From positions 124,001 through 188,000 of the IMG/VR virus record IMGVR_UViG_3300025000_000053: DNA of 64,000 nt; one strand, given 5' to 3'. The notes beneath the pieces were generated by a model. The model was not told the origin of the DNA, ran no database searches, and worked only from the letters and a program-made list of their open reading frames with translations. Of the stretch, positions 4,637 through 53,400 are shown piece after piece. Position 1 is the stretch's first letter, and every line of letters starts with the position of its first letter. The position numbers and the translations under genes were made by a program.

Positions 4637-4643
4637 AAAAATA

Positions 4644-4680
4644 ATATGATAAGATGATTTCTTATATCATCTTATCATAT
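4644..4680. terminator. Bidirectional intrinsic terminator between convergent blocks
   Basis: ATATGATAAGATGAT-ttcttat-ATCATCTTATCATAT, 15-bp stem with A/T tracts on both sides. Confidence 0.75.
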
Positions 4681-4683
4681 TTA

Positions 4684-4935
4684 TTATTTTGTAACCAAAA
4701 TAAATCTATTATCCAAAATTGAATAATGTGGATACTTAGATTTAAATTCAATCGCAAACTTACTTTTATTTAATAGTTCTTGCAATTCATCTGAAATAAG
4801 CTCATCAATTTTTTCTTTAGCATCTAATGATTTCATACATAATTCATAAATTCTACATTCTTCTGGGAGACATGATTCATCCCAAATTAAACAACTTGAC
4901 ATAATTGCTTGTCTTAACTGACCATTTGTAACCAA
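4684..4935 (-). CDS. Hypothetical protein
   Basis: 83 aa ORF with RBS AAGGGG. Confidence 0.6.
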   Translation of the reverse strand: MVTNGQLRQAIMSSCLIWDESCLPEECRIYELCMKSLDAKEKIDELISDELQELLNKSKFAIEFKSKYPHYSILDNRFILVTK

Positions 4936-5019: not shown

Positions 5020-5313
5020 TTATAAATTCTTTATCTTTAATGGTTTTATACTAGAAATCCAAACACTGCTAGAACTACCTTCCATAGTATCCCATTCATA
5101 TCTTATTTCAATTTCATAAGTTTCGGTTATAATCTTATAAATTTTAGTATAAAAACACCAATAAACATATTCATCGTATCCTTGCTTTGATGTATAACTA
5201 TTAATTAATGAAACCTTTAAAGGAACATAATTGTATTTCTTTAAATATTCCTTTACTTCTTTGGGTAAAAGGAATATTCTTATCTTCATATATAATTTTA
5301 AGAAATTCACCAT
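5020..5313 (-). CDS. Hypothetical protein
   Basis: 97 aa; translationally coupled to the upstream ORF; RBS GGAGG. Confidence 0.6.
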   Translation of the reverse strand: MVNFLKLYMKIRIFLLPKEVKEYLKKYNYVPLKVSLINSYTSKQGYDEYVYWCFYTKIYKIITETYEIEIRYEWDTMEGSSSSVWISSIKPLKIKNL

Positions 5314-5678
5314 AAGTTATTTTCCTCCTTTTCTAAATAAGGAAATTTAATATCAAATACCTCTTTATTATACAAATCCTTTTTATAACAATCTTTACAA
5401 AAGGGATACTCTTTTTTAGTATCCCTATGTATTAATCTTATGTCAGTCACAGCCTTACATACAACACATTCTTCAAATAACAAAATACTTTTATTATCTA
5501 TTTTTGTTATGTCAATTTCTTCATAACAAGTAAAATATTTAATATTAAACAAATTAATGTGTTTCTCTTTCATATTTATTAGTTTCATACTTAGAATGTG
5601 ATTAGATGAATTAAATTCAGTTACTAAAAAAGTTTGTATTAAACCATTTTTCCAATAAATCGTTAACAATTTTCTCAT
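5307..5678 (-). CDS. Hypothetical protein with CxxC...CxxC zinc ribbon
   Basis: CVVC and CKDC motifs. Confidence 0.6.
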   Translation of the reverse strand: MRKLLTIYWKNGLIQTFLVTEFNSSNHILSMKLINMKEKHINLFNIKYFTCYEEIDITKIDNKSILLFEECVVCKAVTDIRLIHRDTKKEYPFCKDCYKKDLYNKEVFDIKFPYLEKEENNLW

Positions 5679-5693
5679 ATTTATTCATCTCCA

Positions 5694-7820
5694 CTATTTT
5701 TTATTATGTTTCAACGACATTTTAGGAATTGTTCGTAATTTATAATTTTTAACTGCTTCTTCCATAAAATAGTTATGAATATTAAATCCATTACTTACAT
5801 TATTCTTTAATAAAGAATATTTACCTTCTTTATTCATAACATATGTGTTTACATTATCTTTAAAATAATATGTTAATATGGATAAAGCTTTTATTTTTAT
5901 GTTTTCTTCTTCTAAAGGAATTAAAATTTCTACCCTTCTATCTAAATTCCTAGTAAGTAAATCAGCACTTGAAATATAAATACCACTATTATGAAAATAA
6001 TACATACGACTATGTTCTAGATATCTACCTATTACACTTCTAATAGTTATATTTTTATTAATAGGTTTCATAGAACAAATTCCTCTACAAATAATATTAA
6101 TCTTTACTCCATTTTCAGATGCAAAGTATAATTTCTTTATTATATCTTTGTCAGACAATGAATTTAATTTTAATGTAATACATGTTTTCTTTTTATTTTT
6201 AGCTTGTTTAATTTCATTATCTATCAACTGGTATATTTTATTCCTTAGATTATATGGAGCAAAATATAACTTATTAATATCTGTAGATGGTTCAGAAAAA
6301 CCTGATAATATATTAAATATATGAAGTAAGTCTTCACTTATTTTTTGATTAGAAGTGAAATAAGACAAATCTGTATAAATCTCAGATGTTTTGTCATTAT
6401 AATTACCTGTACCTAAATGAGAATATAATTTTAATCCTCCCTTATGAGTTCTTTTAACAACAACTATAAATTTACAATGAGTTTTTAATTCATCCATACC
6501 ATAAATTATTCTACAGCCAGCTAGTTTTAGTTTCTCTATTAAAGATATATTTCTATTTTCATCAAATCTAGCTTTTATTTCTAGTAAAACACTAACTTGT
6601 TTACCATTTATAGCTGCTTTACATAAAGCTTCAACTATAGGTGAATCTTTTGATGAAACTCTATATAAAGTTTGTTTAATAGCAACAACATTACTATCAA
6701 TAGAAGCATGTTCAATAAATTTTACTATTGGATCAAAACTTTCATATGGGTGATGTAATAAAATATCATTATTATCAATGGCTGTAAACATATCATGTTC
6801 ACCTATTAATTCTTGTGGATATTGAGAATTAAATTCATTATATTGTAAAATCTGATTTTTAATTGGCATAGATATAAGAAATGAATAATCCAATAAGTTA
6901 TCACTTTTAAATACATGACTTTTATTTAATTTAAACATTTTCATCAATATCTTTATTACTTGTTTAGATAAAGTATCTGTCACTTCCATAAATATAGGTT
7001 CACTATATTCTCTTAATAATAGAGAAGACTTCATTCTATCAACAAGATAAATATCTTTATCATGTTCAATTTCAATATTACCTTCTTTTAAAATTCTCAT
7101 GCATCCTTTATTTAAAATATTTTTATTAACAAATATTTTATTTAAAAATGTAAAAACAATATCCTCAAGGAATATATATTTATTTATTTCATCGTCAGTT
7201 TCAACTTTGTATAATCTTTCAAGATGTTCTATTGGTATTATAGAAATAACTTGAAGATTCTTATTATATTTATCCTCTAATGATACAATTATATTTAATT
7301 GTTTTGATTTAATAGGAGGGAATTCTTTAGTGGTATCATATGACATTGGAGTTAAAAGAGGGTAAATATTTTTATTAAATATATTCTCTATATATTCTCT
7401 TTCTTTCTTTGTTAAATTATCATACTTACAAATATGAATATTATTCTTATTGATAATTTTCAATAAATTTTTATAACTACTATTTTGTAATAACTTAAAT
7501 TCTTTAATTGATTCTAAAACCTTTTCATATTCTTCTTCATATGATAATCCAGATATATCATTATTCCTTTCATTAATAACATTATTAACTAGAGATGAAA
7601 ATCTAACCATAATAAATTCATCTAAATTACTAGAAGAAATGCCTAAAAATTTTAGTCTTTCTAATAAAGGTATTTCATCTCTAATACTTTGGTGTAAAAC
7701 CCTTTTATTAAAATCTAACCAACTTAATTCTCTATTGATATAAAAATGAGATTTATTAAAAGAATTAAATTGTTTTATTTCATTATTTAATAAGGTTGTA
7801 AAATTATCAGTTATAATCAA
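5694..7820 (-). CDS. ppk1: Polyphosphate kinase 1
   Basis: RELSWLDFNKRVL, ISSSNLDEFIMVR, HHPYESF, KQTLYR, KARFDE, LKTHCK (phospho-His), HLGTGNYN, RYLEHSR, SADLLTRNLDRRVE; full length, 708 aa. Confidence 0.95.
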   Translation of the reverse strand: MIITDNFTTLLNNEIKQFNSFNKSHFYINRELSWLDFNKRVLHQSIRDEIPLLERLKFLGISSSNLDEFIMVRFSSLVNNVINERNNDISGLSYEEEYEKVLESIKEFKLLQNSSYKNLLKIINKNNIHICKYDNLTKKEREYIENIFNKNIYPLLTPMSYDTTKEFPPIKSKQLNIIVSLEDKYNKNLQVISIIPIEHLERLYKVETDDEINKYIFLEDIVFTFLNKIFVNKNILNKGCMRILKEGNIEIEHDKDIYLVDRMKSSLLLREYSEPIFMEVTDTLSKQVIKILMKMFKLNKSHVFKSDNLLDYSFLISMPIKNQILQYNEFNSQYPQELIGEHDMFTAIDNNDILLHHPYESFDPIVKFIEHASIDSNVVAIKQTLYRVSSKDSPIVEALCKAAINGKQVSVLLEIKARFDENRNISLIEKLKLAGCRIIYGMDELKTHCKFIVVVKRTHKGGLKLYSHLGTGNYNDKTSEIYTDLSYFTSNQKISEDLLHIFNILSGFSEPSTDINKLYFAPYNLRNKIYQLIDNEIKQAKNKKKTCITLKLNSLSDKDIIKKLYFASENGVKINIICRGICSMKPINKNITIRSVIGRYLEHSRMYYFHNSGIYISSADLLTRNLDRRVEILIPLEEENIKIKALSILTYYFKDNVNTYVMNKEGKYSLLKNNVSNGFNIHNYFMEEAVKNYKLRTIPKMSLKHNKK

Positions 7821-7862
7821 ATTTATTACCCCCTAATATTTTATTTATTAGTATTCATTGTT

Positions 7863-7872
7863 ATAATATATA
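7863..7872 (-). promoter_or_regulatory. Putative early promoter TATATATTAT (representative copy, upstream of ppk1)
   Basis: Exact copies at 10798, 17472, 33512, 37829, 45268, 47581, 49479, 54921 and one-mismatch copies at 8994, 12704, all intergenic and upstream of minus-strand genes. Confidence 0.7.
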
Positions 7873-7911
7873 AATAAAAAGAAGATAACTATATAGTTAT
7901 CTTCTTTTTAT

Positions 7912-8148
7912 TTATATATAATCTTCATAGAAATATATTATTATATAAAAACCAAATATAATTAATTGAACTATATGATATTCATTTTTTATCAGACTCA
8001 AATTTAAAGTAAATGACCATGATACATTTGTAATAAAAGTAGATAATAGTAATTTCCATCCACCATATTTTTCCCTTTTAACTAAAAGAAAAATTGTTAA
8101 TAATGATAATAATATAGATAGATTACCTAAATAAAATAATTTAATCAT
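7912..8148 (-). CDS. Small membrane protein
   Basis: 78 aa with three hydrophobic stretches. Confidence 0.5.
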   Translation of the reverse strand: MIKLFYLGNLSILLSLLTIFLLVKREKYGGWKLLLSTFITNVSWSFTLNLSLIKNEYHIVQLIIFGFYIIIYFYEDYI

Positions 8149-9004: not shown

Positions 9005-10249
9005 TTACTTCTCTTCATTAAATCCATACACATCTAACATTAGTGTATTTATATATAAAGCATTAACATATACTAATAATCTATAAGTTGAATATATATT
9101 AACATTTTTTGTTATAAGTGTTAATGTATTAAAATCAATATCATATTCACCTATATCTCTATTTAACATTTTATTATCCATCATAACAGAAAATTTTAAA
9201 ATTGTTTCTAATGGAATACCATGAGTTAAACAATAGTCAATAGATGCTAGTATAGAGTTATTTAATACTTGTTTTATATTCATTAAATCAGGCATAGTAT
9301 CACTTTCAACTTTATATAAAGGATATGCATATAAAGTCCATCCATTAGGCATTTGTTCACTAAATAAATTATTTATTGTAAACATGGGTATTATTTGATT
9401 TTTATTATCAATAATCGACATATCAGTTTGTGTTATTATTCCTGAGGATTGTGTTACATAATAATATAAACCGGCTCCATTAAATTCTGTTGAGATTGTA
9501 AAAGTCGTAGCATATGAATCGGCAACCATTCCTTTCTTGTTACCATCATCAATAGCTAAATTAGAAAAAATTGTATCTATATTAACAGGATAAAATCTAA
9601 AAAATTCATCATTAGATGAAGCGTTCTTTACTTTATAAGTTACTGGATATATAGATACACTATTTATATAATCTAAAAAAGTTTTAATACTTCCATCAGG
9701 AGTATACAAATCAATTCCTATATCTTTAGATAAAAGTTCCATAAGCCCTCTAGGAACATAGCTTTCTAAACATGTTTCTAAAAAAAATGGTTTATCTTGT
9801 CTTATTCTATTCTTCAAATAATTAGCTTGATTTAATTGTTGTATTTGCGTATCTGTTACTATTGTTACATCAAAATACATTTTTATACGATTTAATAAAT
9901 ATTTTATATATACACCTTTTGTTTTATCTTCAATAAATGGTTGTAAATTACTAAAATCTATATCCATAAAATTATCTGTAATTCTAGTAGTTAAGTATGT
10001 TCCGTAGAGAAATGTGTCACTATCATCTAATTCAATTCTTGGTTTAATTATTAATATAGGTTTATTCTTTTTTATAAATTCTCTATTTGAGTTTTGAAAT
10101 ATATTGAATTGTTTATAAGCTATAGTAGAACTAATATGAATTGTTTTAAAATAATTTGGAACAAATAAACCTCTAACAAATTCTGTCATAAAAGAAGTGA
10201 TATTACCAAAAGTATGTGCTAAAGATGTTTGAGCCATAGCATATTCCAT
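9005..10249 (-). CDS. Putative jumbo-phage virion/core protein
   Basis: 414 aa; RBS GGAGG; late-type promoter AACA-TTCATT-TA at 10279-10290. Confidence 0.45.
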   Translation of the reverse strand: MEYAMAQTSLAHTFGNITSFMTEFVRGLFVPNYFKTIHISSTIAYKQFNIFQNSNREFIKKNKPILIIKPRIELDDSDTFLYGTYLTTRITDNFMDIDFSNLQPFIEDKTKGVYIKYLLNRIKMYFDVTIVTDTQIQQLNQANYLKNRIRQDKPFFLETCLESYVPRGLMELLSKDIGIDLYTPDGSIKTFLDYINSVSIYPVTYKVKNASSNDEFFRFYPVNIDTIFSNLAIDDGNKKGMVADSYATTFTISTEFNGAGLYYYVTQSSGIITQTDMSIIDNKNQIIPMFTINNLFSEQMPNGWTLYAYPLYKVESDTMPDLMNIKQVLNNSILASIDYCLTHGIPLETILKFSVMMDNKMLNRDIGEYDIDFNTLTLITKNVNIYSTYRLLVYVNALYINTLMLDVYGFNEEK

Positions 10250-10832: not shown

Positions 10833-12646
10833 TTAAATATTGTTAAATTCATATAAACCAATGATTTGGTCTTTTAATAGATTAAAGTCATCATTAAATA
10901 AACCATCATTTCTAGAAATAAACATAGAGGTTACTGGGTTAAAGGTCTTATTAAAGGCTTTTATATGTTTTTTAGATTTCAGGGATATGATATTTAGCAC
11001 ATCTCCGTCAAAATCTGCATTTAAAACTTTTAATATTTGTATAGGGAGACTCATTGTATATTGATCAATAATATCATTTTTAACATCTATTATCTTCATT
11101 AAAAGCATGGATCCATAATTAATTGTCATTGTGTTCATATTGTTCGTTAGACAATACAGTTCTCTTATGAACTTCCTTAGTTTTCACTAAGATACCAGAC
11201 TATATTATCATCTTTATAATAAGTTATATGAAGAGACACTTATTTCGATTTAAGGGATTTTCACCCACTCACTTGAGCCCTACTCCTAATGCTTATTTCA
11301 AAGCTAAAGGATAGTCGTTGAACCTTTCTCTAATTAATAGAGACTTGGCTGCGGATTACTCAATCCTAAAACCTTATTACTTATACCCTAGATGATTAGT
11401 CTAAGCCACTATAACATCACTATTATAGTTTAGTAGTTTTAGGCTATAAGAGATTTCCCGACAATTAAAGTGTTGATTTTCACTATAAATCACTCTATAG
11501 TGCCCCACAAAGTTTAGGGTTCCTATTGATAAGAACTTTTGGTTCCCATTTCTTTAATAAATATTTCATTATCTCATACAATTTATTATTATATACAATA
11601 GTGCCTTTATACCAATATTCATATGCTTCGTTTTCAGAAATATCATTTATTCTAGAAACATGAGTTATTATCTCATATTTATATAATTCTAAAAATGCTA
11701 AATAACCTATTTTTATTTCATTTGCTTTTAATATAGGGTCGGGAATTACAACGTTCCTAGCAGAAAAATTTAATTTACCACCAAGAATCTCCCACTTAAT
11801 ATGACCTTTTCTTTGATCTATTTGTTTAAATATTAAATAACATAATTCAATTAATTTCTTTTGAATTATACTAAGGATTTTATTCTCGTCAATATCTCCC
11901 CAATCTTTATTCTTTCTAGTCTCTATTAAATCCCTATCCTTTAATAGATTACTTAAAGAAACTATTGGATTAAACTTCTTATCCATAGAATTATAAAAGA
12001 AAGATTCACCTTTAAATTGAGAAGGTCTCAACACAGATGAATAAACTGGAATACATGAAGAAAATATTTTATCTTTTTCCTTATATATTTCATCAATCAT
12101 TTCAATCTTATTCTTTTTCTTAATTCTATAAAAATCCATTATTTCATCAAATCTTTTTTTAAACTCCATAATACCAATACCTTTAAATGGGGTTTTTCCT
12201 TGTTTATCAATTATATGACCATCCTTAGTAAATTCTTTATCATATTCAATAATTTCAAGGAAACCCTTTTCCCCAATTATTGATTTTAACATTCTATAAA
12301 ATATTGGATGTATTATACTATAGTCACCTAATTTAATCCAACCAGTAATTTTCAAATCAACATCTTTAAATTTAACTGTTGTACCACAAATATTACATTC
12401 TTCTTCATCATATAATCTCCCTTTTAATTCACCACATTCACAAGTATATCTTTCAGCAAATGCATCATCATCTTCAAAATCTGTAGCAAATAAAGGAGAT
12501 TGAATACCATATTTAGATTTTTTTTGTTTACCTTTAAAAGCAGGTTCTTTTATTTCAAATCCTTTACCTATAATAAAATCTTTTTCACACTCCTCATCCC
12601 AATTTAATTTTACTAATCTAACTTCGTCATGTTCCAAATAAAACAC
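10833..12646 (-). CDS. Phage multisubunit RNA polymerase beta' N-terminal part, spliced (exons 12646-11516 and 11126-10833, ~474 aa); probably the non-virion RNAP
   Basis: Zn-binding CECG...CNIC, GKLNFSARNVVIP, junction INRNP|TINYGS, catalytic NADFDGD in exon 2; early-type motif at 12704-12713. Confidence 0.9.
11127..11515 (-). mobile_element. Group I intron (IA-like, 389 nt, no ORF) in RNAP beta'N
   Basis: 5' exon ends in U with P1 CCCU|A:UGGGG (U.G at the splice site); P10 ACAA:UUGU; core AAUUGUCGGG, AAUCCGCAGC, GUUCAACGACUA, AUAUAGUC; terminal G at 11127; splicing restores the frame. Confidence 0.92.
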
Positions 12647-17534: not shown

Positions 17535-19955
17535 TTAAATATGTGTTCCTCTGTCTTTAAGTTCTGATTTTTTAGCACTATTAAACATATTTATTGTACT
17601 TAAATATCCTGTAATTCTTCTTACTCTATTAATGTCTTCAGAACTACAACTCGGACATTCTTTAGGATATACACCTGAATAATTACATGAACGACAAAAA
17701 TCAACTGGGAAGTTAATTCCACCATAACCAACATCACAATCTTTCATATATTTAATAATATTAATTACAGCTTCAGTATTGTGAAGAAATGGGGATGTTG
17801 ACTCAATATAAGTAATATGACCAGCATTACAATATTTATGAAAAGCTCCTTCTAACATAATTTTTTTAAACCAACTGATTTCATAACCTACTGGTATATG
17901 AAAACTATTAGTATAATATTCTTTATCAGTAACACCTGGAATTATACCAAATTGTTTTCTATCAAGTCTTAAAAATCTACCAGATAATCCTTCAGCCGGA
18001 GTTGCTAATAAAACTATATTAATTTTTCTTTTAAGTGTTTCTTTATCAGAAAATTCTCTCATTGTTTTTATAATATTTAAACCAAGTTCATAAATATTTT
18101 TATCTTCTCCATGATGTTTACCAGTTAAAGCTACTAATGCTTCCGCAAGACCAATAAATCCAATTGACATAGAACCATGTTTAATAGCTTCTTCTATTTT
18201 ATCATTATACCCTAATTTATCAGAATCTAGATATAAACTTTGACCCATAATAAAAGGCATATCTCTTACAAGTAGATTCTTCTGTATGTCATATCTATGA
18301 TTAAGTTGATCAAATATAAGATTTGACTTACTTTCAAGTAATGTAAAAAACTTTTCAATACTACCTTTTGCTTCTATTGCAATTCTAGGTAAATTTAATG
18401 TTGTAAATGATAAGTTACCTCTCTTATCTGTAGTTTCAGGTCCATTAATATTACCAATAACCCTAGTTCTACAACCCATATAAGCTACTTCAGCGTCACC
18501 TGTGTATTGCTTATTAAAACTAGAATCCATAAATGAAAAAGTTGGATTTAATTTAGTACCAGCTATTTCACATGCTAATTTAAATAAGTCATAATTAGGG
18601 TCTCCGGGTTCCACATTTACACCATCTTTAACTTTAAAGATAATATTTGGAAAAATTGGATTTTCCCCTTTACCTAAACCTGCTTTATATGCAAGTAAAA
18701 TATTCTTTGTTACTTTCCTACCAGCATCACTCATATCAGTACCAATATTTAAACTACTAAAAGGGACCTGTGCCCCAGCCCTAGAATGCATACTATTTAA
18801 ATTATAAATAAGGGCCTCACAAGCTTGATAAGCTTCATTATCATTAGCATCAACAAAAAAATCAGCCATATCACGATCAAAAAAAGCAAATGATTGACCA
18901 CCATGCATATCCACTGTACCGCCTCTTTCGAGGTATTTCAAACGGGTTAGACTATATCATATACCTATTTTTTTATTATAGGCACCCTGGCACTTCGGAT
19001 CGGGATTTTCACCCTAATTACCCCTACTCTACTCGCTTCGTGTATCAAATTGATACCTTATTTTATACACCAAAAAGTGTATTAGCTTTCGATAGTCGTT
19101 AGCGTTTCTCTACTATTTTTTAAAATATTAGAGCTTACGACGGTATTACCTGCTATCCTTATTTCAGGACCGTAGGCTCTCTTAGAAAGTGTATTCATTA
19201 CTATTATAACTATAATAGTATTTATTTAACTTTTACCGTTAGCCAGATATAATATCCGACACCCATCTATTGATGGTTCACCAGGTTATTCAATGCACAT
19301 TACTGTACAAGGGAACAAATTAATTATTCTGGGCACTTTGTAAAACTATAGCTGCTAATGCAGTTGCACTACTTGTTCTTTTAGGTGGTCTAATCCAACC
19401 ATGTCCATTATCAAAACCTTTAGTTAATATTTCCTTAAGCGGTATTTGTAAACAAGTTAAGGTTTTTCCATAAAAATCCAAATCATGTATATGAATAGAC
19501 CCATCTATATGAGCATTTGATATTTCTTCAGGTATCAATCTAGATAAGTAATACTTTCTTGATGCCTCACTTGCAATTTGTAACATTTTAGCCATTGGAC
19601 CTGTACCAATGTTAGCATTTTCTCTTGAAGTTTCTTTTAATATATCTTCAACACAATCCATCAATTCACTCTGACCTTCTCTAATACGTGTTCTTTTATT
19701 TCTATATAAAATATACGCTTTTGAAGTTTTAGCTCTACCATTATTAATTAAAACAGTCTCAACAACATCTTGTATGTCTTCAACATTATGTATATCTTTA
19801 CCTAAATTTTCTAATCTGTTATAAACTTCTAATGCCAATTTAAAAGAAGTCGAATTATCATTACCACCTAAAGATTTTGCTGCTTTAAAAATACAACTAG
19901 CTACTGTTTCAATACTAAAATCAACTATTCTACCATCACGTTTTCTAACTTGCAT
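17535..19955 (-). CDS. nrdD: Anaerobic (class III) ribonucleoside-triphosphate reductase, spliced (exons 19955-19326 and 18911-17535, ~668 aa)
   Basis: N-terminal ATP cone, IHIHDLD, junction QSAQN|DMHGGQS, YMGCRT, YYTNSFH, CxxC...CxxC, glycyl-radical RRITGYL. Confidence 0.95.
18912..19325 (-). mobile_element. Group I intron (414 nt, no ORF) in nrdD
   Basis: P1 GAAU|AA:UUGUUC; core ACGACUAUC and GAUAUAGUCU; terminal hairpin CCUC-GAAA-GAGG; final G at 18912; splicing restores the frame. Confidence 0.9.
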
Positions 19956-20579: not shown

Positions 20580-20966
20580 TTAATCATCAAAAGCCTTTTC
20601 AGTTGGTATTTCTTTAATATCCCAATCATCTTTATCTCTATTTTCGTTTATTATTTCATTACATAAATTGATACATTTTTTACATATACTTGCTTGTTCA
20701 GAATAAACAATAAGATTTTCATCCGTATTCTTTTCTCCACAAAAAGAACAAAAGACACCGCTTTCTCTATAAATATTTTCTGAGGAAGCAACAACAATTC
20801 CTTTATAATTAAATTTATTTTCTTCTATCCAATCTCTAAATTTTTTATTAATAACTTCCAAATACTCACTTTCTGGAACTAGAATTTTTGAATCTAAATG
20901 TATTAATTTAGTATTTATAACTTTTTTAATAAAAGAAAATTTCAAAATATCACCTCCATCATTCAT
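20580..20966 (-). CDS. Protein with a ClpX-type C4 zinc finger
   Basis: CSFCGEK...ICKKCINLC. Confidence 0.75.
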   Translation of the reverse strand: MNDGGDILKFSFIKKVINTKLIHLDSKILVPESEYLEVINKKFRDWIEENKFNYKGIVVASSENIYRESGVFCSFCGEKNTDENLIVYSEQASICKKCINLCNEIINENRDKDDWDIKEIPTEKAFDD

Positions 20967-22002
20967 TTAACCAATTAATTAATTGGTTTCTTGGTTCTTT
21001 ATTATATAAAAAATATTGAGCTACACATCCACCACCACATCTCATTATTTTATTACAATTATTAATACAAAGTTCTGGTACTTCTCTTGTTCTTAAAAAT
21101 ACAATTAATTTATCATAATACCATATATCATATAAACTTGTTTTTAAAATATTAGTAGGTGATATAAAATCACCCAACCATTTAAATGCTTCACAAGGAA
21201 ATATTCCACCTTTAGCCGATATATTTAATTTGTTAATAGCAACTGAACATGGTTTATTATTTTTGTCATTAATTATACAATTAAATGGACAACCAAATCT
21301 AACAGATATATCTTTATATCTGTTATCACTAATTTTATTATTAATTTCCTTTAATAATAGTTCCATATTGTCTCTACTAACCTCTAACTCATTATTATTA
21401 AAACATCTCCCTTGTGGAACAAGTCTTAATAAACTTATTTTTTTAATACCAATATCATTAATTATATCTATTAAATCTAGAAAATCAAGATAATTTATAC
21501 TCATAGGCACAAAATGAATTTCTGTTTCAATATTATATTTTAGACAACTTTTAATTGAATTTATAATAGTGTTAAAGGCATTTTTAATTTTAACAATTTT
21601 ATATATAGTTTCGTCATTTGACCCATGTAAACTAATCACAATCTTATTAATATTTTCTTTTAAAAATAATAAAATATCTTCCGTTATAGACGATAATTTA
21701 TTATTATGATATATGATTCCACAACTATATATTGTAATATGTAAACCTAATTTTTTAGCAAAAGAAATTATTTTTTTAAATTCAGGATGAAGTAATGGAT
21801 CTCCACCAGATATTGATAAATTTTCAACTCCTTCAGAAACAGCATCTAATAATATATTTTTTATATCTGAAAAAGATAATATATCTTTACTTTTAGAATT
21901 AGCTTTAGATGAACAGTGAATACAATTTAACATACATTTATTTGTTATTTCTATACATAAATTTTTTAAACTAATATCTGGAAATAATTCACACATTCTC
22001 AT
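20959..22002 (-). CDS. Radical SAM/SPASM-domain protein
   Basis: CMLNCIHC, SGGDPLL, C-terminal CSVA...GIFPC...C...CGGGC. Confidence 0.9.
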   Translation of the reverse strand: MRMCELFPDISLKNLCIEITNKCMLNCIHCSSKANSKSKDILSFSDIKNILLDAVSEGVENLSISGGDPLLHPEFKKIISFAKKLGLHITIYSCGIIYHNNKLSSITEDILLFLKENINKIVISLHGSNDETIYKIVKIKNAFNTIINSIKSCLKYNIETEIHFVPMSINYLDFLDLIDIINDIGIKKISLLRLVPQGRCFNNNELEVSRDNMELLLKEINNKISDNRYKDISVRFGCPFNCIINDKNNKPCSVAINKLNISAKGGIFPCEAFKWLGDFISPTNILKTSLYDIWYYDKLIVFLRTREVPELCINNCNKIMRCGGGCVAQYFLYNKEPRNQLINWLNE

Positions 22003-22014
22003 TTAAATACTCCT

Positions 22015-23226
22015 TTATACAATCAAATTATTTAATTCAATACGAGATATTTGTGATGTTGAATTATGAAATTTCTTCATTGATAAATTAACTAATGTAG
22101 ATGATACTCTTGCCGAAGTTAATCCAATATTAGTTATATTTAATTTTTCATACATAAGACCAGCACACACTCGACATAACTTTTTAGATACATTTCCCAT
22201 TGGAGTTCTCATTTTAACTTTATTACCAATATATTTATTTATATTATCATCATCCAATAAAATTAGTTTATTTCTTTCCATAATATATCTATATATATAA
22301 TCATTAATATTTTCTTTAGTTATTTCTACCTCCATTAATGCTTTAGAACCACAGTCACTACCTTTTTCATCCAAAACAACAGCTTGTAAAGCTGCAATAA
22401 TTTTTTTAGAAAAATAACCAGAATCAGCTGTTCCAATAGCTTTAGGATATGCACCCGTTATAATAGCATTTCCGTAAACAGCTAAATCTTCTTTTTTTAT
22501 ACCTTCCATTAAACAATTTTCAACAAAATCAAATTCACCTGTAGATGGATTATATACCGGACCTTTCATAATATTAGTGTTTTTATAGTTATTACTGAAA
22601 GTACCTCTAGCACCTGATTTATATAATTCATATCCAGTGTCATCTTTTAATTCTTCTTCAGCTAATTGTATTAGCTCTTTTTCAATTTTAACTGCTGTTA
22701 TTATATCCCCTTGTTTTAACTTTTCCTTATTTTCTTTTATTAATTTATTCTTCAAATCAATAACTTTAGGAATAGGTTTAAATAATTTCATAGTATATGA
22801 ACCTGAAATAACAATATGAAATTGTTGAGCTAACCATTGAATATCATTAAGATAATTAACCATAATATCAACAGATATTTTATCATTTAATAAAGCTTTA
22901 GAAAGTTTATTTTCTATTTCTGAAAGTACTTTCTTATCTATAGTTTTATTAACATAACCAAGAATATTAACTAAATTTCTTTCAATTATATATTTATTAT
23001 AAATAAATAAACCTATATTAGTTGTAACTTTTTCTTTGTTAAAATATTCATTTGGTTTTAAATCAAATTCATCCCAGGTTTTAAATCTACTATTAATAAC
23101 ACTGACTTTACCGTTATTATCTTTTTTAATACTATCACCAAATAGGTTTAATAATAATTCAAATGTTATATCTTCTGGTTTTAAACTTAATATATATTCT
23201 TTATCCTTTTGATTTATCATTCCCAT
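22015..23226 (-). CDS. Phage RNA polymerase beta' C-terminal part; probably the virion RNAP
   Basis: SGARG, bridge helix GTADSGYFSKKIIAALQAVVL..DCGS, Zn site CRVC, trigger-loop-like NIGL...LSMKKFH; late-type promoter at 23260-23271. Confidence 0.88.
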   Translation of the reverse strand: MGMINQKDKEYILSLKPEDITFELLLNLFGDSIKKDNNGKVSVINSRFKTWDEFDLKPNEYFNKEKVTTNIGLFIYNKYIIERNLVNILGYVNKTIDKKVLSEIENKLSKALLNDKISVDIMVNYLNDIQWLAQQFHIVISGSYTMKLFKPIPKVIDLKNKLIKENKEKLKQGDIITAVKIEKELIQLAEEELKDDTGYELYKSGARGTFSNNYKNTNIMKGPVYNPSTGEFDFVENCLMEGIKKEDLAVYGNAIITGAYPKAIGTADSGYFSKKIIAALQAVVLDEKGSDCGSKALMEVEITKENINDYIYRYIMERNKLILLDDDNINKYIGNKVKMRTPMGNVSKKLCRVCAGLMYEKLNITNIGLTSARVSSTLVNLSMKKFHNSTSQISRIELNNLIV

Positions 23227-36821: not shown

Positions 36822-37787
36822 TCAACTATTTAAATACTCTTGTAATATACCAATTATACTGGTAAAAACTTTATCATTTTTTATTGTAAATCCAGCAGCT
36901 TTAGCATGTCCTCCACCACCGAAATATTTCTCAGCCCATTTACCTAAATGGACATCATTTTTATTACTCCTTAAATCAACCTTACCCGATGTTAAATCAA
37001 TCATTAGTGCAACATCAATTTCAGGATATTTTTCACATATTTTATTACCTAGAATACTAATAAAACCTGTAAATGAATCAATAAATACAATACCGGCCAC
37101 ATACCCTTGGATTTCAATTATATGAACTTTTTCCAATTTCTTTTTAATAAATATATCTTCTTTATCTCTCATTCTATTCACTAATATTCTTAACTCAATA
37201 TTAATTAAATCTTCTCCATTTTTAATATTAGTTTTTATATTATTTTTAAAAAGTTCTAATCCCATTAAACTGCACGCTATACTTAAATCATATGCTTCAA
37301 AATTTTTATTCTTATACCATCTATAAGTATCATATTCAGTTACAAGTTCTACAAATTTATACAATTTCCAATAGATCCTACTAAATAATGTTTTATCATT
37401 CATACTCTTATTATAGTATTCAGTTATTAATTCGGTTCCTGATGTTAATCTACCAACCCTTTCACTTATTACTTCAGCCCAGGAATAACGATTTAAAAAC
37501 TTATTCGTATCATGATGATCTCTTAAAACTACTTCAAAATCAGGTCTATTACTTATATATGAATCTATAAGTTTGGCTGTTTCTAATGGAACACCCATAT
37601 CAGTGATAATTAATTTATCAAATTTATCAGCATGATTATTTAAAAAATCCTGAACTATTGTTCCTATTTTGAGTCTATCTACAAATCTAGTATACACTTT
37701 ATTACCTAAAGCTTCTTCAAATATTTCAATAACTACACCACAACCAGCACCATCTAGATCCCTATCAGTAAACGATTGAACATTCAT
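36822..37787 (-). CDS. DHH/DHHA1 phosphoesterase (NrnB-like)
   Basis: DRDLDG, ITD, RDHH, GGGGHAKAAG; early motif at 37829-37838. Confidence 0.88.
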   Translation of the reverse strand: MNVQSFTDRDLDGAGCGVVIEIFEEALGNKVYTRFVDRLKIGTIVQDFLNNHADKFDKLIITDMGVPLETAKLIDSYISNRPDFEVVLRDHHDTNKFLNRYSWAEVISERVGRLTSGTELITEYYNKSMNDKTLFSRIYWKLYKFVELVTEYDTYRWYKNKNFEAYDLSIACSLMGLELFKNNIKTNIKNGEDLINIELRILVNRMRDKEDIFIKKKLEKVHIIEIQGYVAGIVFIDSFTGFISILGNKICEKYPEIDVALMIDLTSGKVDLRSNKNDVHLGKWAEKYFGGGGHAKAAGFTIKNDKVFTSIIGILQEYLNS

Positions 37788-50456: not shown

Positions 50457-53400
50457 TTGATTTTTATTTCTGATATACCACATTTAAAAACCTATAAGCA
50501 AAAAGTTCTATTACCTAAAGATGAGAAGTATCCTAGTATTAATAGTGTAGTTTTTATTATTAATAATAACATACAATCATCTATAGGACTATTAAACCAT
50601 CAATTTATTAAGAATAATAACATGTATCATTTTTATTTTATGGATCACGTATATAACGGTAAATTATTTAATAGAACTTTTAGAGTTTTATATCGTAATG
50701 AAAGAAATGATATTTATAATAATATAGAAAAAGAAGTTCGATTCATACAAACAGTTCTAGATTTACATTCAGTAAATAAGAAAAATATATATGTTGATTT
50801 AATAAAACATAATAGTTTATTCTTTCAATTAAGTAAAAAAGTTAATTTTACAATTCGTATTAAAAATTATATAGATTATCTAGATAAGTTAATTAATGAT
50901 AGTCATTTTAATCAGTATAAGTATAAAACTATTTGTATTGATATTAATAGTTGGGTTAGTGATTTAAAGACTCAAATAAAAGGTAAATTAAATTTTGATA
51001 ATCCAATATTTATTATTTATTATTGTATGTATAAATACCTTGAAAAATTTAAAGAACTAGGGGATATTAATATTATTTTCTATACTAATGATAGTGTATT
51101 AAGATTAAATCCTTCATTATGTGATAAAAGCTCATATTCTTTATTTAAGAAAGAGATTATCAAAGCGTCTCCTAAAAGTTTATTAGATATGAGTGAAGAT
51201 AATATTGAAAAAGTACTAAAAAGAAAAGATGTTGCTGATAAAATAATAGGATATCTTAATGACCAACATAGATTTGTTGGTGATGATAAAACTGAAGAAG
51301 ATGAAAATTTTGAAACTAGTATTGAAGATAAAGTAGATGAAATAATTGATGCTAATAAGTTAGATAATAATAGTAATGATGAGATGTATAGTGAAGTTTC
51401 AAAAGTTATTATTAATGATGATGAAATTATAAAAAAAATTCATATGATGAATCAAGAGAATAAAGTTGGTAGAAGTACAGCTTCTATTAAAAGGGACGAA
51501 GAATTAAGAAAAAGACAAAAAGAGATAATAAAAGATAAAATAGGAATAGATAATATCTATGAAACTAATAAAGAACAACTAGATATTCCTAAATTTGATG
51601 TTACAGATAAAGTTAATACTACTAATAAAAATGTAACTACTATAAGATATCCTCAATTTGAAAAAGCTTATAATGAAGTTCTTCATGAAAAGGATTTACT
51701 TAATAATATAAAATTTTTAAATGAAAAATCTATTCCAGTTTATATTAGAGGTATAGAACGAGTTGATTCATCCGATGAATTAAATTTAAAAGAAACATAT
51801 ACTTTTGATTTAGAAGATGAAAATAGAGTTAGGCATAAATTAAAATTTGATATCCCTAAATTTATAGATGATAAATTTTTATATCTTGGTGGTAATAAAA
51901 AGATTATTATGAAGCAATTATTTATGAAGCCAGTGGTTAAGACTGGACCAGATGAAGTACAGATTTGTACTAATTACAATAAGATGTTTATTAGACGCTA
52001 TGGTAATAAAATATCATCTAAAATAGAAAAAATGAGAAAATTATTATATGAACAAAAAGAAGGTAAAGGTATTAAAGTTAAATATGGTAATAATTTATCT
52101 ATTAATAACAAATATGATACTACTATAGAATATGATGAATTATCTAAAAGCTTTACTTATATCCGTATAGGTAAAACTGAATTTTATTTTAATCAAGATG
52201 ATGCTACAAATATAGTTAAAGATAAAAAAATAAAACTTAATCAAAATGAATTCTTATTAGGTCTTATTGAAAATGGTAAAAATCCAATACCTATTACAAT
52301 TGATAAAAATACTCAAAAAATAGGCACATCTTTCGATATAGTTGACTATATACTTTCTATGTTGACACAAGGATTAGTGCAAGATTTTGATGATACTAAA
52401 AGTGGTAAGAAATTTGTTTACACTAGAGCTTATATAATGGAAAGACATGTTCCAGTAGTTTTGTTAATTTCATTCTTAGAAGGTTTATCTACAGTAATAA
52501 AAAAAGCTAATATTAAACATTATTTTTCAGATAAAAGACCTAAAGATATTACTCATAATGAGGGAATAATTCAATTTAGTGACGGGTATTTAATATATGA
52601 AAAATATCCATTTGAAAATTCTTTATTAATGAATGCATTTGCAGATATTCCAACTAAAACTTTCGAATATGGTGAATTTGATTCAAAAGATGTTTATTTA
52701 TCTTTATTTGATACTTTATATGGTAATAGGATAATTGGTAATGCCTTTCTTAACTCATATGAATTTTTAATTGATCCTATTACAAGAGAAGTATTAGAAG
52801 ATTTAAACTATCCAACAGATTATGTTTCTTTAGTTTTATATGCTAATTCTTTATTAGCAACTAATTCATATATTAAAGAAAATAATATGAATTTATATAG
52901 AATAAGATCAAATGAACTGGTTAATGCCTTATTATATAAAGAAGTTGCTAATGCTTATATTAAGTATAGAACTACTTCTTTAAATAATAATCCTGTTAAA
53001 ATTTCTGTACCACAAGATGTTATTATTAAAAAGATACTTGTTGCACAGACAGTCGAGGACTACAGCACATTAAATCCTATAACCGAAGTCGAGAAATCCC
53101 GTATGATCAGTCCAAAAGGACATTCAGGAATGAACCTGGATGAAGCGTATACACAAGATAAAAGAGCATATGATAAAACGATGCTTGGTATAATAGCTAT
53201 GTCAACTTCACCGGATTCATCGTGTGGAGTAACAAGACAACTTACATTAGAACCCAATATAAAAAATCCGAGGGGATATATCGATATAAATGACGATAGA
53301 TTAGAAATTTTAAAAGATGCAAATCTATTTTCTCCAGCTGAATTATTATCTCCTCTCGGAAATACAAGGGATGAACTTGCTATTGTCCCACTATGTAGAA

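What the first reader, a model, noticed from the sequence alone, without database searches (positions are those of the whole stretch)
5694..7820. Intact polyphosphate kinase 1 under a phage early promoter
Seen: a 708-aa PPK1 with all catalytic motifs, preceded by TATATATTAT (7863-7872) and embedded among phage orphan genes. Established: PPK1 makes polyP from ATP and can regenerate NTPs; polyP affects stress responses, Lon proteolysis and nucleoid condensation. To my knowledge it is an unusual phage gene. Inference: energy or phosphate banking, NTP supply, or DNA compartment organisation during infection.
Basis: partly seen in the sequence, partly recalled or inferred. Interest (0 to 1): 0.6.

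Follow-up and report, generated by a model that had tools for sequence, protein, structure and literature searches.

The report
Early-expressed polyphosphate kinase in jumbo phages
A giant bacterial virus related to Bacillus phage AR9 carries an intact polyphosphate kinase behind the promoter type that AR9 uses in the first minutes of infection, and about half of its uncultured relatives have kept this gene, so it probably matters to infection although its role is untested.

Summary
Window 5694-7820 (-) encodes a 708-aa canonical PPK1: four full-length Pfam domains, 699.6 bits on TIGR03705 (cut-off 465.85), and every catalytic and ATP-binding residue checked is conserved.

The window lies mid-way in a 249,853-bp IMG/VR phage contig at about 24.5% GC. 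Its nearest cultured relatives are AR9/PBS1-type jumbo phages of Bacillota.

This genome has 57 exact copies. 51 are intergenic, mostly 33-100 nt before a same-strand start, each with a purine 7 nt downstream. Upstream of ppk that base is G at 7856.

The same motif precedes ppk in relatives down to 36% PPK1 identity. Phage PPK1s form one clade sister to Bacillota enzymes. Their distances track the phage RNA polymerase (Mantel r = 0.92), and dN/dS is 0.13. 15 of 28 related contigs of 200 kb or more carry the gene. Misassembly is excluded.

Function is inferred only, most likely an ATP/polyP buffer with NDP-kinase activity. Expression could not be tested. Verdict: a new member of a known kind, of moderate interest.

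The parts
5694..7820 (-). ppk1 coding sequence, 708 aa, TTG start. Domains in window coordinates: N 7431-7742, middle 6870-7406, C1 6291-6794, C2 5793-6269. The autophosphorylation histidine H448 (E. coli H435) is the codon at 6477-6479.
7829..7833 (-). Ribosome-binding site GGGGG, 8 nt before the TTG start
   Evidence: AGGGGG and GGGGGT are among the most enriched upstream hexamers in the genome.
7856..7856 (-). Predicted transcription start (+1, G), 6 nt after the promoter core, giving a 36-nt 5' UTR
   Evidence: Inferred from AR9 AAATATATATTAT-(6N)-G+1. This position is a purine in 51 of 51 genomic copies. Not mapped experimentally.
7863..7875 (-). AR9-type early (virion RNA polymerase) promoter element, ATT-TATATATTAT. 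The A at 7875 matches the A seen 3 nt before the core in 49 of 51 copies.
   Evidence: Conserved upstream of ppk in relatives.
7871..7914 (-). Terminator-like hairpin (20-bp stem) with a T-run. It ends the upstream transcription unit and abuts the ppk promoter.
5307..5678 (-). 123-aa ORF 15 nt downstream of ppk, probably co-transcribed, function unknown
   Evidence: Seen only in the 90% relatives.
5020..5313 (-). 97-aa ORF, probably the same early operon, function unknown
4684..4935 (-). 83-aa ORF, last gene of the putative early operon, function unknown
4643..4681 (.). Bidirectional terminator-like hairpin (16-bp stem, T-runs on both strands) between the ppk operon and the convergent block
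9005..10249 (-). u414 (phrog_21946), the conserved upstream neighbour of ppk. It is a core AR9-type gene with a late-type promoter motif. It is context only and not part of the ppk unit.

Best explanation
The gene encodes a catalytically competent, canonical PPK1 that is a long-standing resident of a lineage of uncultured AR9/PBS1-like jumbo phages.

SHOWN. (1) Full PPK1 architecture with every catalytic and ATP-binding residue checked. (2) The gene sits about 130 kb into a 250-kb phage contig, has the phage's own base composition, and is under purifying selection. (3) Phage PPK1s form one clade sister to Bacillota enzymes and have diverged in step with the phage RNA polymerase. (4) ppk is the first gene of a roughly 3.2-kb unit bounded by two hairpin terminators. 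It is preceded by an element identical to the core of AR9's mapped early promoter, and that element is kept upstream of ppk across the lineage.

INFERRED. (5) The injected virion RNA polymerase transcribes ppk within minutes of infection. The same motif drives the non-virion RNA polymerase subunits, an NAD-dependent DNA ligase, a gyrase-A-like topoisomerase and an oligoribonuclease-like DHH enzyme. (6) The enzyme catalyses reversible ATP + polyP(n) <-> ADP + polyP(n+1), plus the polyP-driven NDP->NTP reaction known for PPK1. (7) Most likely role: while host energy metabolism still runs, it banks phosphoanhydride bonds and phosphate as polyP. When the ATP/ADP ratio falls it runs backwards and acts as an NDP kinase. 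That would buffer ATP and NTP supply for host-independent transcription and replication of a genome of about 228 kb in a probably anaerobic, energy-poor Bacillota host. The direction and purpose of the flux cannot be read from sequence.
For: Family and residues.

Phage context: 249,853-bp virus record, CheckV 100%; RNA polymerase subunits, NrdD, virion protein; nearest cultured relatives are AR9, PBS1, Goe21, LPJP1 and the Staphylococcus jumbo phages.

Composition: ppk GC 21.8% and GC3 11.1%, against 24.6 +/- 3.6% and 13.0 +/- 3.4% for phage genes.

Selection: dN/dS 0.13.

Clade: 37 phage rows with SH-aLRT 97, or 39 rows with 82, sister to Bacillota with 99. The nearest cellular PPK1s reach only 40-43% identity, against 45-90% among phage copies.

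Co-inheritance: Mantel r = 0.918 between PPK1 and RNA polymerase distances, matched by 0 of 5000 permutations, slope 0.92. PPK1-positive genomes occur in every main RNA polymerase lineage, with a minimum of 3 changes on that tree.

Promoter.

Early regulon content.

Precedent that polyP matters to phages: host polyP is reported as required for lytic growth of P1 and fd (Li, Rao and Kornberg 2007, as cited in PMC2435150).
Against: The early class is assigned by sequence identity to AR9's consensus, not by a mapped 5' end. The three bases before the core read ATT here where AR9 has AAA. Lavysh et al. note that a single deviation inactivated one predicted AR9 early promoter. However, A(A/T)(A/T) is this genome's own consensus.

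From my general knowledge, PPK1 kinetically favours polyP synthesis and PPK2 is the usual polyP-consuming enzyme, so the draw-down half of the model is the weaker half.

The genome has no PPK2 or PPX, so no second polyP enzyme supports a cycle.

13 of 28 related large contigs lack PPK1, so the gene is dispensable in some lineages.

The host is unknown.

The bacterial side of the tree holds only the 80 best-scoring reference genomes plus two outgroups.
Confidence: 0.55

Rival explanations
1. PolyP acts as an effector rather than a store. Early synthesis of the polyanion would reprogramme the host, for example by stimulating Lon-type proteolysis of ribosomal or nucleoid proteins to free amino acids, by condensing or silencing host DNA with nucleoid proteins, by chelating Mg2+, or by acting as a chaperone.
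For: Early timing fits a takeover function. PolyP activates Lon degradation of ribosomal proteins (cited in PMC2435150). PolyP also organises Hfq-DNA condensates and silences AT-rich and prophage genes in E. coli (PMC11894788). From my general knowledge, PPK1 favours synthesis. The genome has no PPX or PPK2 to consume polyP.
Against: All the effector data come from Proteobacteria, and nothing is known for the probable Bacillota hosts. Silencing of AT-rich DNA would also hit this 24.5% GC phage genome. No candidate polyP-binding partner was found beside ppk, where the neighbours are orphans or late structural genes.
Confidence: 0.2
2. Draw-down only. The phage enzyme mainly runs in reverse from the start, converting the host's existing polyP granules into ATP and other NTPs.
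For: PPK1 is reversible and has NDP-kinase activity (general knowledge). The closest cellular PPK1s are from Clostridia, so the likely hosts make polyP. The phage carries NrdD and other nucleotide-handling genes.
Against: The host's own PPK1 could already do this. PPK2, the enzyme better suited to polyP-driven NTP synthesis, is absent. Early in infection the ATP/ADP ratio should favour synthesis.
Confidence: 0.15
3. The 10-mer is a host sigma-A extended -10-like promoter and not a virion RNA polymerase promoter, so ppk timing is not necessarily 'early' in the AR9 sense.
For: TATATTAT resembles an AT-rich -10 hexamer. No transcript mapping exists for this phage.
Against: 51 letter-perfect copies of a 10-mer with a fixed purine 7 nt downstream and no -35 partner are unlike sigma-70-type promoters. 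Sigma-70-like sites are not enriched here (53 found, 67 +/- 8 in shuffles). [quoted passage not shown] The genome encodes AR9-type RNA polymerase subunits.
Confidence: 0.07
4. Artefact or passenger: host DNA mis-joined into a phage contig, or a recently captured gene with no role in infection.
For: Several 'phage' PPK1 records in GenBank are really bacterial DNA: the Acinetobacter phage MD-2021a contigs and MT835512. The contig's two ends are divergent copies of each other, so the assembly is not flawless.
Against: The gene lies about 108 kb or more from the two end copies. The same u414 - early promoter - ppk arrangement is seen in more than 20 independent assemblies. Base composition is fully ameliorated, dN/dS is 0.13, and divergence tracks the RNA polymerase.
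Confidence: 0.03

Closest known systems
Bacterial polyphosphate kinase 1 (E. coli PPK, PDB 1XDO/1XDP; TIGR03705)
   Same: Same four-domain architecture and length. Autophosphorylation histidine, second histidines and ATP-binding residues are all conserved. There are no notable indels against Bacillota enzymes.
   Different: It is encoded by a virus and driven by a phage RNA polymerase promoter. It is only 40-43% identical to the nearest cellular enzymes. Four clade-signature residues were found: S486, S583, T623, N658.
PPK1 of Vibrio phages vB_VcorM_GR7B and GR11A (GenBank MT366760, MT366761)
   Same: A cultured jumbo phage (208 kb) with an annotated full-length PPK1 among hypothetical genes.
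   Different: 33% identity. It branches with the proteobacterial type outside the clade described here, so it is an independent capture. It has no AR9-type early motif upstream.
Early (virion RNA polymerase) promoters of Bacillus phage AR9, AAATATATATTAT-(6N)-G+1 (Lavysh et al. 2017, PMC5312081)
   Same: The core 10-mer is identical, with the same 6-nt spacer to a purine start and several dozen copies per genome (41 in AR9, 51 here). An AR9-type late motif, AACA-N6-T[A/G], co-exists in the same genome.
   Different: The upstream triplet is A(A/T)(A/T) rather than AAA. The +1 base is A in 37 copies and G in 14. About 13 copies carry an extra TTTTTT(C/A)GTAT box about 20 nt upstream, which the passages of the AR9 paper I read do not mention. 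No AR9-type cultured phage carries ppk.
Virus-encoded phosphorus auxiliary metabolic genes (ppk1, ppk2, pstS, phoH) reported from metagenomes (e.g. PMC13188868)
   Same: A phage-borne copy of a host phosphorus-metabolism gene. Viral ppk1 transcripts have been reported in environmental metatranscriptomes.
   Different: Those reports are catalogue entries on mixed viral contigs. Here the gene is tied to a defined jumbo-phage lineage, a defined promoter class and long vertical inheritance.

Membership tests
Polyphosphate kinase 1 (PPK1) | Four-domain architecture: N, head/middle, and two PLD-like C-terminal domains | tested here: met
   All four Pfam models match end to end.
Polyphosphate kinase 1 (PPK1) | Score above the curated equivalog cut-off | tested here: met
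   TIGR03705 699.6 bits against 465.85; NF003921 719.7 against 701.
Polyphosphate kinase 1 (PPK1) | Autophosphorylated histidine (E. coli H435) and the partner histidines H454 and H592 | tested here: met
   H448, H468 and H603 align with them and are invariant in 12 phage homologues.
Polyphosphate kinase 1 (PPK1) | ATP-binding residues (E. coli N45, R375, S380, R405, R564, R621) | tested here: met
   N65, R387, S393, R418, R579 and R629 are conserved. Residue roles are recalled from Zhu et al. 2005 and were not re-read here.
Polyphosphate kinase 1 (PPK1) | PolyP synthesis from ATP, and the reverse and NDP-kinase reactions | not testable with these tools
   Needs an enzyme assay.
AR9-type early (virion RNA polymerase) promoter | Consensus AAATATATATTAT-(6N)-G+1 | tested here: met
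   ATT-TATATATTAT-aacaat-G at 7875->7856. The core matches 10 of 10, the spacer and G match, and one of the three upstream A's matches, which fits this genome's own A(A/T)(A/T).
AR9-type early (virion RNA polymerase) promoter | Over-represented, intergenic, oriented, and at a fixed distance from gene starts | tested here: met
   57 copies, 51 intergenic, mostly 33-100 nt upstream of same-strand starts.
AR9-type early (virion RNA polymerase) promoter | A mapped 5' end that appears early and without protein synthesis | not tested
No cultured representative exists.
AR9/PBS1-like jumbo phages | Split beta and beta' genes for multisubunit RNA polymerases | tested here: met
   Window 11495-12646, 22015-23226 and 50457-53408; genome 7777-9315, 83286-84446 and 235115-236665. 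Best cultured matches are LPJP1, Goe21, PBS1 and the Staphylococcus jumbo phages.
AR9/PBS1-like jumbo phages | Both early and late AR9-type promoter classes | tested here: met
   Early motif. Late motif: 60 in upstream gaps against 25 antisense and 18.6 +/- 4 in shuffles, peaking 30-50 nt before starts.
AR9/PBS1-like jumbo phages | Uracil in place of thymine in virion DNA | not testable with these tools
   Sequence files cannot show dU. I did not search for the enzyme set that would imply it.
Viral auxiliary metabolic gene | Flanked on both sides by viral genes on one contig, not at a prophage edge | tested here: met
   About 130 kb from one contig end and 118 kb from the other, with phage genes on both sides. 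Synteny holds in independent assemblies.

The most novel reading that the evidence does not exclude
PPK1 is an ancestral part of the immediate-early programme of a large, so far uncultured branch of AR9-like jumbo phages. PolyP made in the first minutes of infection would have a specific, required role: an energy and phosphate buffer, or a takeover polyanion, that lets these host-transcription-independent viruses replicate genomes of about 230 kb in energy-poor anaerobic Bacillota. That would make polyP metabolism a new axis of phage-host conflict.
Probability: 0.3. Interest if true: 0.65.

Novelty: new member of a known kind. Interest (0 to 1): 0.45.

Why it matters

Here a phage lineage has carried its own polyP synthase for as long as its RNA polymerase lineages have been diverging, and has wired it to its immediate-early promoter. 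That argues that manipulating polyP, or the ATP/NTP pool through polyP, gives a lasting advantage during infection.

It also gives a concrete system for asking what polyP does in infected cells. The enzyme is easy to express and assay, and the promoter class is defined.

It extends AR9's two-promoter logic to a wide uncultured group. No paper in the searched library links polyphosphate kinase with jumbo phages.

The caveats are serious: there is no cultured host-phage pair, no expression data, and the enzyme itself is ordinary.

Tried and rejected
- **Sigma-70 consensus scan**: 53 sites against 67 +/- 8 in shuffles, so it is uninformative in this AT-rich DNA. No site falls at the ppk promoter.
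- **u414 as a functional partner of PPK1**: the adjacency is conserved down to 23% u414 identity. But u414 is a core gene of AR9-type phages that lack PPK1, is annotated as a structural or membrane protein, and carries a late rather than early motif. I read this as conserved gene order, not a functional pair.
- **DHH/DHHA1 phosphoesterase as a polyP partner**: it also has an early promoter, and Vibrio phage GR7B has a DHH gene near its ppk. But its homologues are NrnA/NrnB-like oligoribonucleases in many Bacillota phages without PPK1. Rejected.
- **A second polyP enzyme**: no PPK2 and no PPX in the genome.
- **Expression test**: I did not try it another way and read laying was not used.
- **GenBank 'phage' PPK1 hits**: the Acinetobacter phage MD-2021a records are bacterial chromosome. 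MT835512 nests in Lachnospiraceae. Neither counts as a phage PPK1.
- **Single-protein IMG/VR scan with the RNA polymerase subunit**: it found one locus. I repeated it with an alignment.
- **First tree run with the mixture model**: it timed out. I rerun it with LG+G4.
- **Li, Rao and Kornberg 2007**: the paper is not held in the library, so it is cited only through PMC2435150.
- **The large representative-protein search, structure prediction and complex prediction**: not used, because the family assignment is unambiguous.
Full report
**1. The observation**

The ORF at window 5694..7820 (minus strand) is 708 aa with a TTG start. It matches all four PPK1 Pfam domains end to end. It scores 699.6 bits on the TIGR03705 equivalog, whose cut-off is 465.85.

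Its best solved relative is E. coli PPK, 1XDO (E = 7e-98). From that alignment I mapped these residues: EcN45/R375/S380/R405/H435/H454/R564/H592/R621 correspond to N65/R387/S393/R418/H448/H468/R579/H603/R629. The residue roles are from my memory of Zhu et al. 2005. All nine are invariant among 12 phage homologues.

The immediate neighbours have no Pfam match above cut-off, and at most match PHROG families of unknown function.

**2. What the window is**

The window is bases 124001-188000 of a 249,853-bp IMG/VR virus record that CheckV rates 100% complete. Overall GC is 24.5%.

Around ppk lie split beta and beta' RNA polymerase genes, an anaerobic ribonucleotide reductase, a radical-SAM protein and a virion protein. 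The nearest cultured relatives of the 983-aa RNA polymerase subunit are Listeria phage LPJP1, Bacillus phages Goe21, PBS1, AR9 and Internexus, and the Staphylococcus jumbo phages. The conserved 414-aa neighbour gives the same answer. None of those phages has a PPK1.

A 2026 review places AR9-like phages outside the nucleus-forming Chimalliviridae.

**3. Not a misassembly**

- ppk lies about 130 kb from one contig end and 118 kb from the other.
- Its GC (21.8%) and GC3 (11.1%) sit inside the phage gene distribution (24.6 +/- 3.6% and 13.0 +/- 3.4%).
- The arrangement u414 - ppk - convergent block recurs in independent assemblies from JGI, ENA and Logan, on contigs of 100-264 kb.
- dN/dS against the two 90% relatives is 0.13.

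**4. The promoter**

A sigma-70 consensus scan is uninformative here: 53 sites against 67 +/- 8 in shuffles.

- It has 57 exact copies in the genome, against a Markov-2 expectation of about 27.
- 51 copies lie in the 10.8% of the genome that is intergenic.
- Every intergenic copy points at a same-strand start, mostly 33-100 nt away.
- A is found 3 nt before the motif in 49 of 51 copies.
- A purine is found 7 nt after it in 51 of 51 copies (A 37, G 14).

Lavysh et al. 2017 mapped 41 early AR9 transcription starts by dRNA-seq to the consensus AAATATATATTAT-(6N)-G+1. They are read by the injected virion RNA polymerase without new protein synthesis. Late promoters are AACA-(6N)-T[A/G], and continuously expressed genes carry both (PMC5312081).

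The late motif is also enriched in this genome: 60 in upstream gaps, against 25 antisense and 18.6 +/- 4 in shuffles, peaking 30-50 nt before start codons.

ppk has the early motif only. The predicted start is G at 7856, giving a 36-nt leader, a GGGGG ribosome-binding site and the TTG start. u414 has the late motif only.

A 20-bp hairpin with a T-run (7914..7871) directly precedes the ppk promoter. A bidirectional hairpin (4643-4681) follows three small downstream ORFs. This gives a putative early operon of about 3.2 kb.

Other genes behind the same motif include two phrog_25005 RNA polymerase proteins, an RNA polymerase beta fragment, an NAD-dependent ligase, a GyrA-like topoisomerase and an NrnA-like DHH/DHHA1 enzyme.

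**5. Conservation of that control**

The exact 10-mer with its downstream purine lies 41-70 nt before ppk in nearly every locus whose PPK1 is at least 55% identical to the window's; L015 is the one exception. The set with the motif includes the 3.6-kb contig binned as a 'Brevinematia' MAG. It also appears on deep branches where PPK1 identity is 36-45% and locus GC is 25-38%: L027, L032, L038, L044 and L039/43.

One subclade with 671-aa enzymes lacks both u414 and the motif within the sequence fetched.

**6. Distribution and origin**

The word-based protein search returned more than 100 clusters at 46-90% identity. Many are on contigs of 200-272 kb. IMG/VR gave 45 loci.

The best cellular matches among reference genomes of 185,579 species are Lachnospiraceae and other Clostridia at 40-43% identity.

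In an LG+G4 tree of 77 sequences, the viral-contig PPK1s form one clade. Support is SH-aLRT 97 for 37 rows and 82 for 39. The clade is sister to a Bacillota clade with support 99, rooted on proteobacterial-type sequences. The Vibrio phage GR7B enzyme lies outside it, so that phage captured its gene independently.

All ten divergent PPK1-bearing contigs tested (216-257 kb) encode the same RNA polymerase subunit at 33-45% identity.

An RNA-polymerase-based survey found 28 contigs of at least 200 kb. 15 carry PPK1, one of them N-terminally short. 13 do not, and nine of those are at least 94% complete.

On the RNA polymerase tree, PPK1-positive genomes occur in every main lineage and PPK1-negative genomes fall in three clusters, with a minimum of three changes. 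Pairwise PPK1 and RNA polymerase distances correlate with Mantel r = 0.918, matched by 0 of 5000 permutations, slope 0.92.

The simplest history is one old capture from a Bacillota-like donor, followed by vertical descent and a few losses. Caveats: bacterial sampling is limited to the best-scoring genomes, and the trees are quick searches without bootstraps.

**7. Mechanism**

What is shown is a competent enzyme, its phage residence, its long retention under constraint, and an early-type promoter. What the polyP is for is inference.

I favour a buffer model. Synthesis would run while host ATP is plentiful, just after injection. Reversal and polyP-driven NDP-kinase activity would follow as demand from phage transcription and replication rises.

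The alternatives are polyP as a takeover polyanion (Lon stimulation, nucleoid condensates), or draw-down of host granules only.

There is no PPK2 or PPX in the genome. The idea of DNA-compartment organisation has no support for a non-chimallin lineage.

**8. Comparison and novelty**

The enzyme is a plain PPK1, with only four clade-signature residues and no notable indels against Bacillota enzymes.

Phage-borne ppk1 is already on record: annotated in two cultured Vibrio phages and listed among viral phosphorus genes in metagenome studies.

What appears to be new is the link to a defined AR9-like lineage, its long vertical history there, and the conserved early-promoter control. No paper in the searched library pairs 'polyphosphate kinase' with 'jumbo phages', and the 2026 review does not mention polyphosphate.

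I rate it a new member of a known kind, with interest 0.45.

**9. Limits**

- The host is unknown.
- Uracil-containing DNA was not assessed.
- Chimallin was not searched for in this genome.
- The residue roles and PPK1 kinetics rest on my memory of the literature.

Noticed in passing
window 53368-53713 and 53732-54088 (+); also 11176 (-), 54087 (+), 55097 (+): Two tandem group I introns by Rfam (RF00028, 61 and 60 bits), just after the RNA polymerase beta'-like ORF. A conserved element of about 90 nt (core GGAAGTTCATAAGAGAACTG) occurs 18 times in the 250-kb genome. It is always intergenic and often lies exactly 38 nt before an ORF restart, so it looks like intron 3' ends. The genome may therefore hold about 18 introns, splitting RNA polymerase beta (11495-12646 plus 10833-11138) and NrdD, among other genes.
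   Followed up: partly
window 11157-11321: The only nucleotide-level matches to GenBank phages fall here: 79% to Staphylococcus phage PALS_2, and 96% over 50 nt to Vibrio, Enterococcus and Staphylococcus phages. They lie inside one of the intron-like elements, which suggests a mobile intron core shared across distant phages.
   Followed up: partly
whole contig (G000 1-21181 against 228289-249853), outside the window: The first 21.2 kb is colinear with the last 21.6 kb at only 82-89% identity, and the match runs to the very end of the contig. The unit genome is about 228 kb. Either two strain variants were joined around a circular or permuted map, or the phage has a long diverged terminal repeat. 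CheckV's '100% complete' hides this.
   Followed up: partly
genome-wide; in the window e.g. 10807, 47590, 54930 (-): About 13 of the 51 early-type promoters carry an extra box, TTTTTT(C/A)GTAT, about 20 nt upstream of TATATATTAT. Others, ppk among them, instead follow a hairpin plus T-run. These are two sub-classes of early promoter that the passages of the AR9 paper I read do not mention.
   Followed up: no
window 56221 to beyond the window end (genome 180221-190087, +): A single open reading frame of 3288 aa with both an early and a late promoter motif upstream. No family search was run on it.
   Followed up: no
window 36822-37787 (-): A DHH/DHHA1 phosphoesterase (NrnA/NrnB-like oligoribonuclease) sits behind an early promoter in the same hairpin-plus-T-run context as ppk. 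Homologues occur in Bacillus, Clostridioides, Lysinibacillus and Streptococcus phages, which fits a Bacillota host.
   Followed up: yes
window 17535-18941 (-), 20959-22002 (-): The NrdD-like anaerobic ribonucleotide reductase matches only the C-terminal two thirds of its profile, so the rest is probably in a separate exon. A radical-SAM protein lies nearby. Together they point to an anaerobic host.
   Followed up: no
L051 (JBKBIJ010000174.1), L132 (CAKLQF020000010.1), L133 (MT835512.1): Three database labels look wrong. The 3.6-kb 'Brevinematia bacterium' MAG contig carries u414, the early promoter and a phage-clade PPK1, so it is a mis-binned phage fragment. The 'Acinetobacter phage MD-2021a' records are bacterial chromosome (ent, fur and pqq genes). 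The PPK1 on 'Bacteriophage sp.' MT835512 nests within Lachnospiraceae.
   Followed up: yes
G022 (IMGVR_UViG_3300042922_000542, 161321-162553): A related 246-kb phage with direct terminal repeats has only a partial PPK1 match: 255.8 bits, below the cut-off, covering profile positions 235-653 in a 613-aa frame. It may be a truncated or decaying copy.
   Followed up: no
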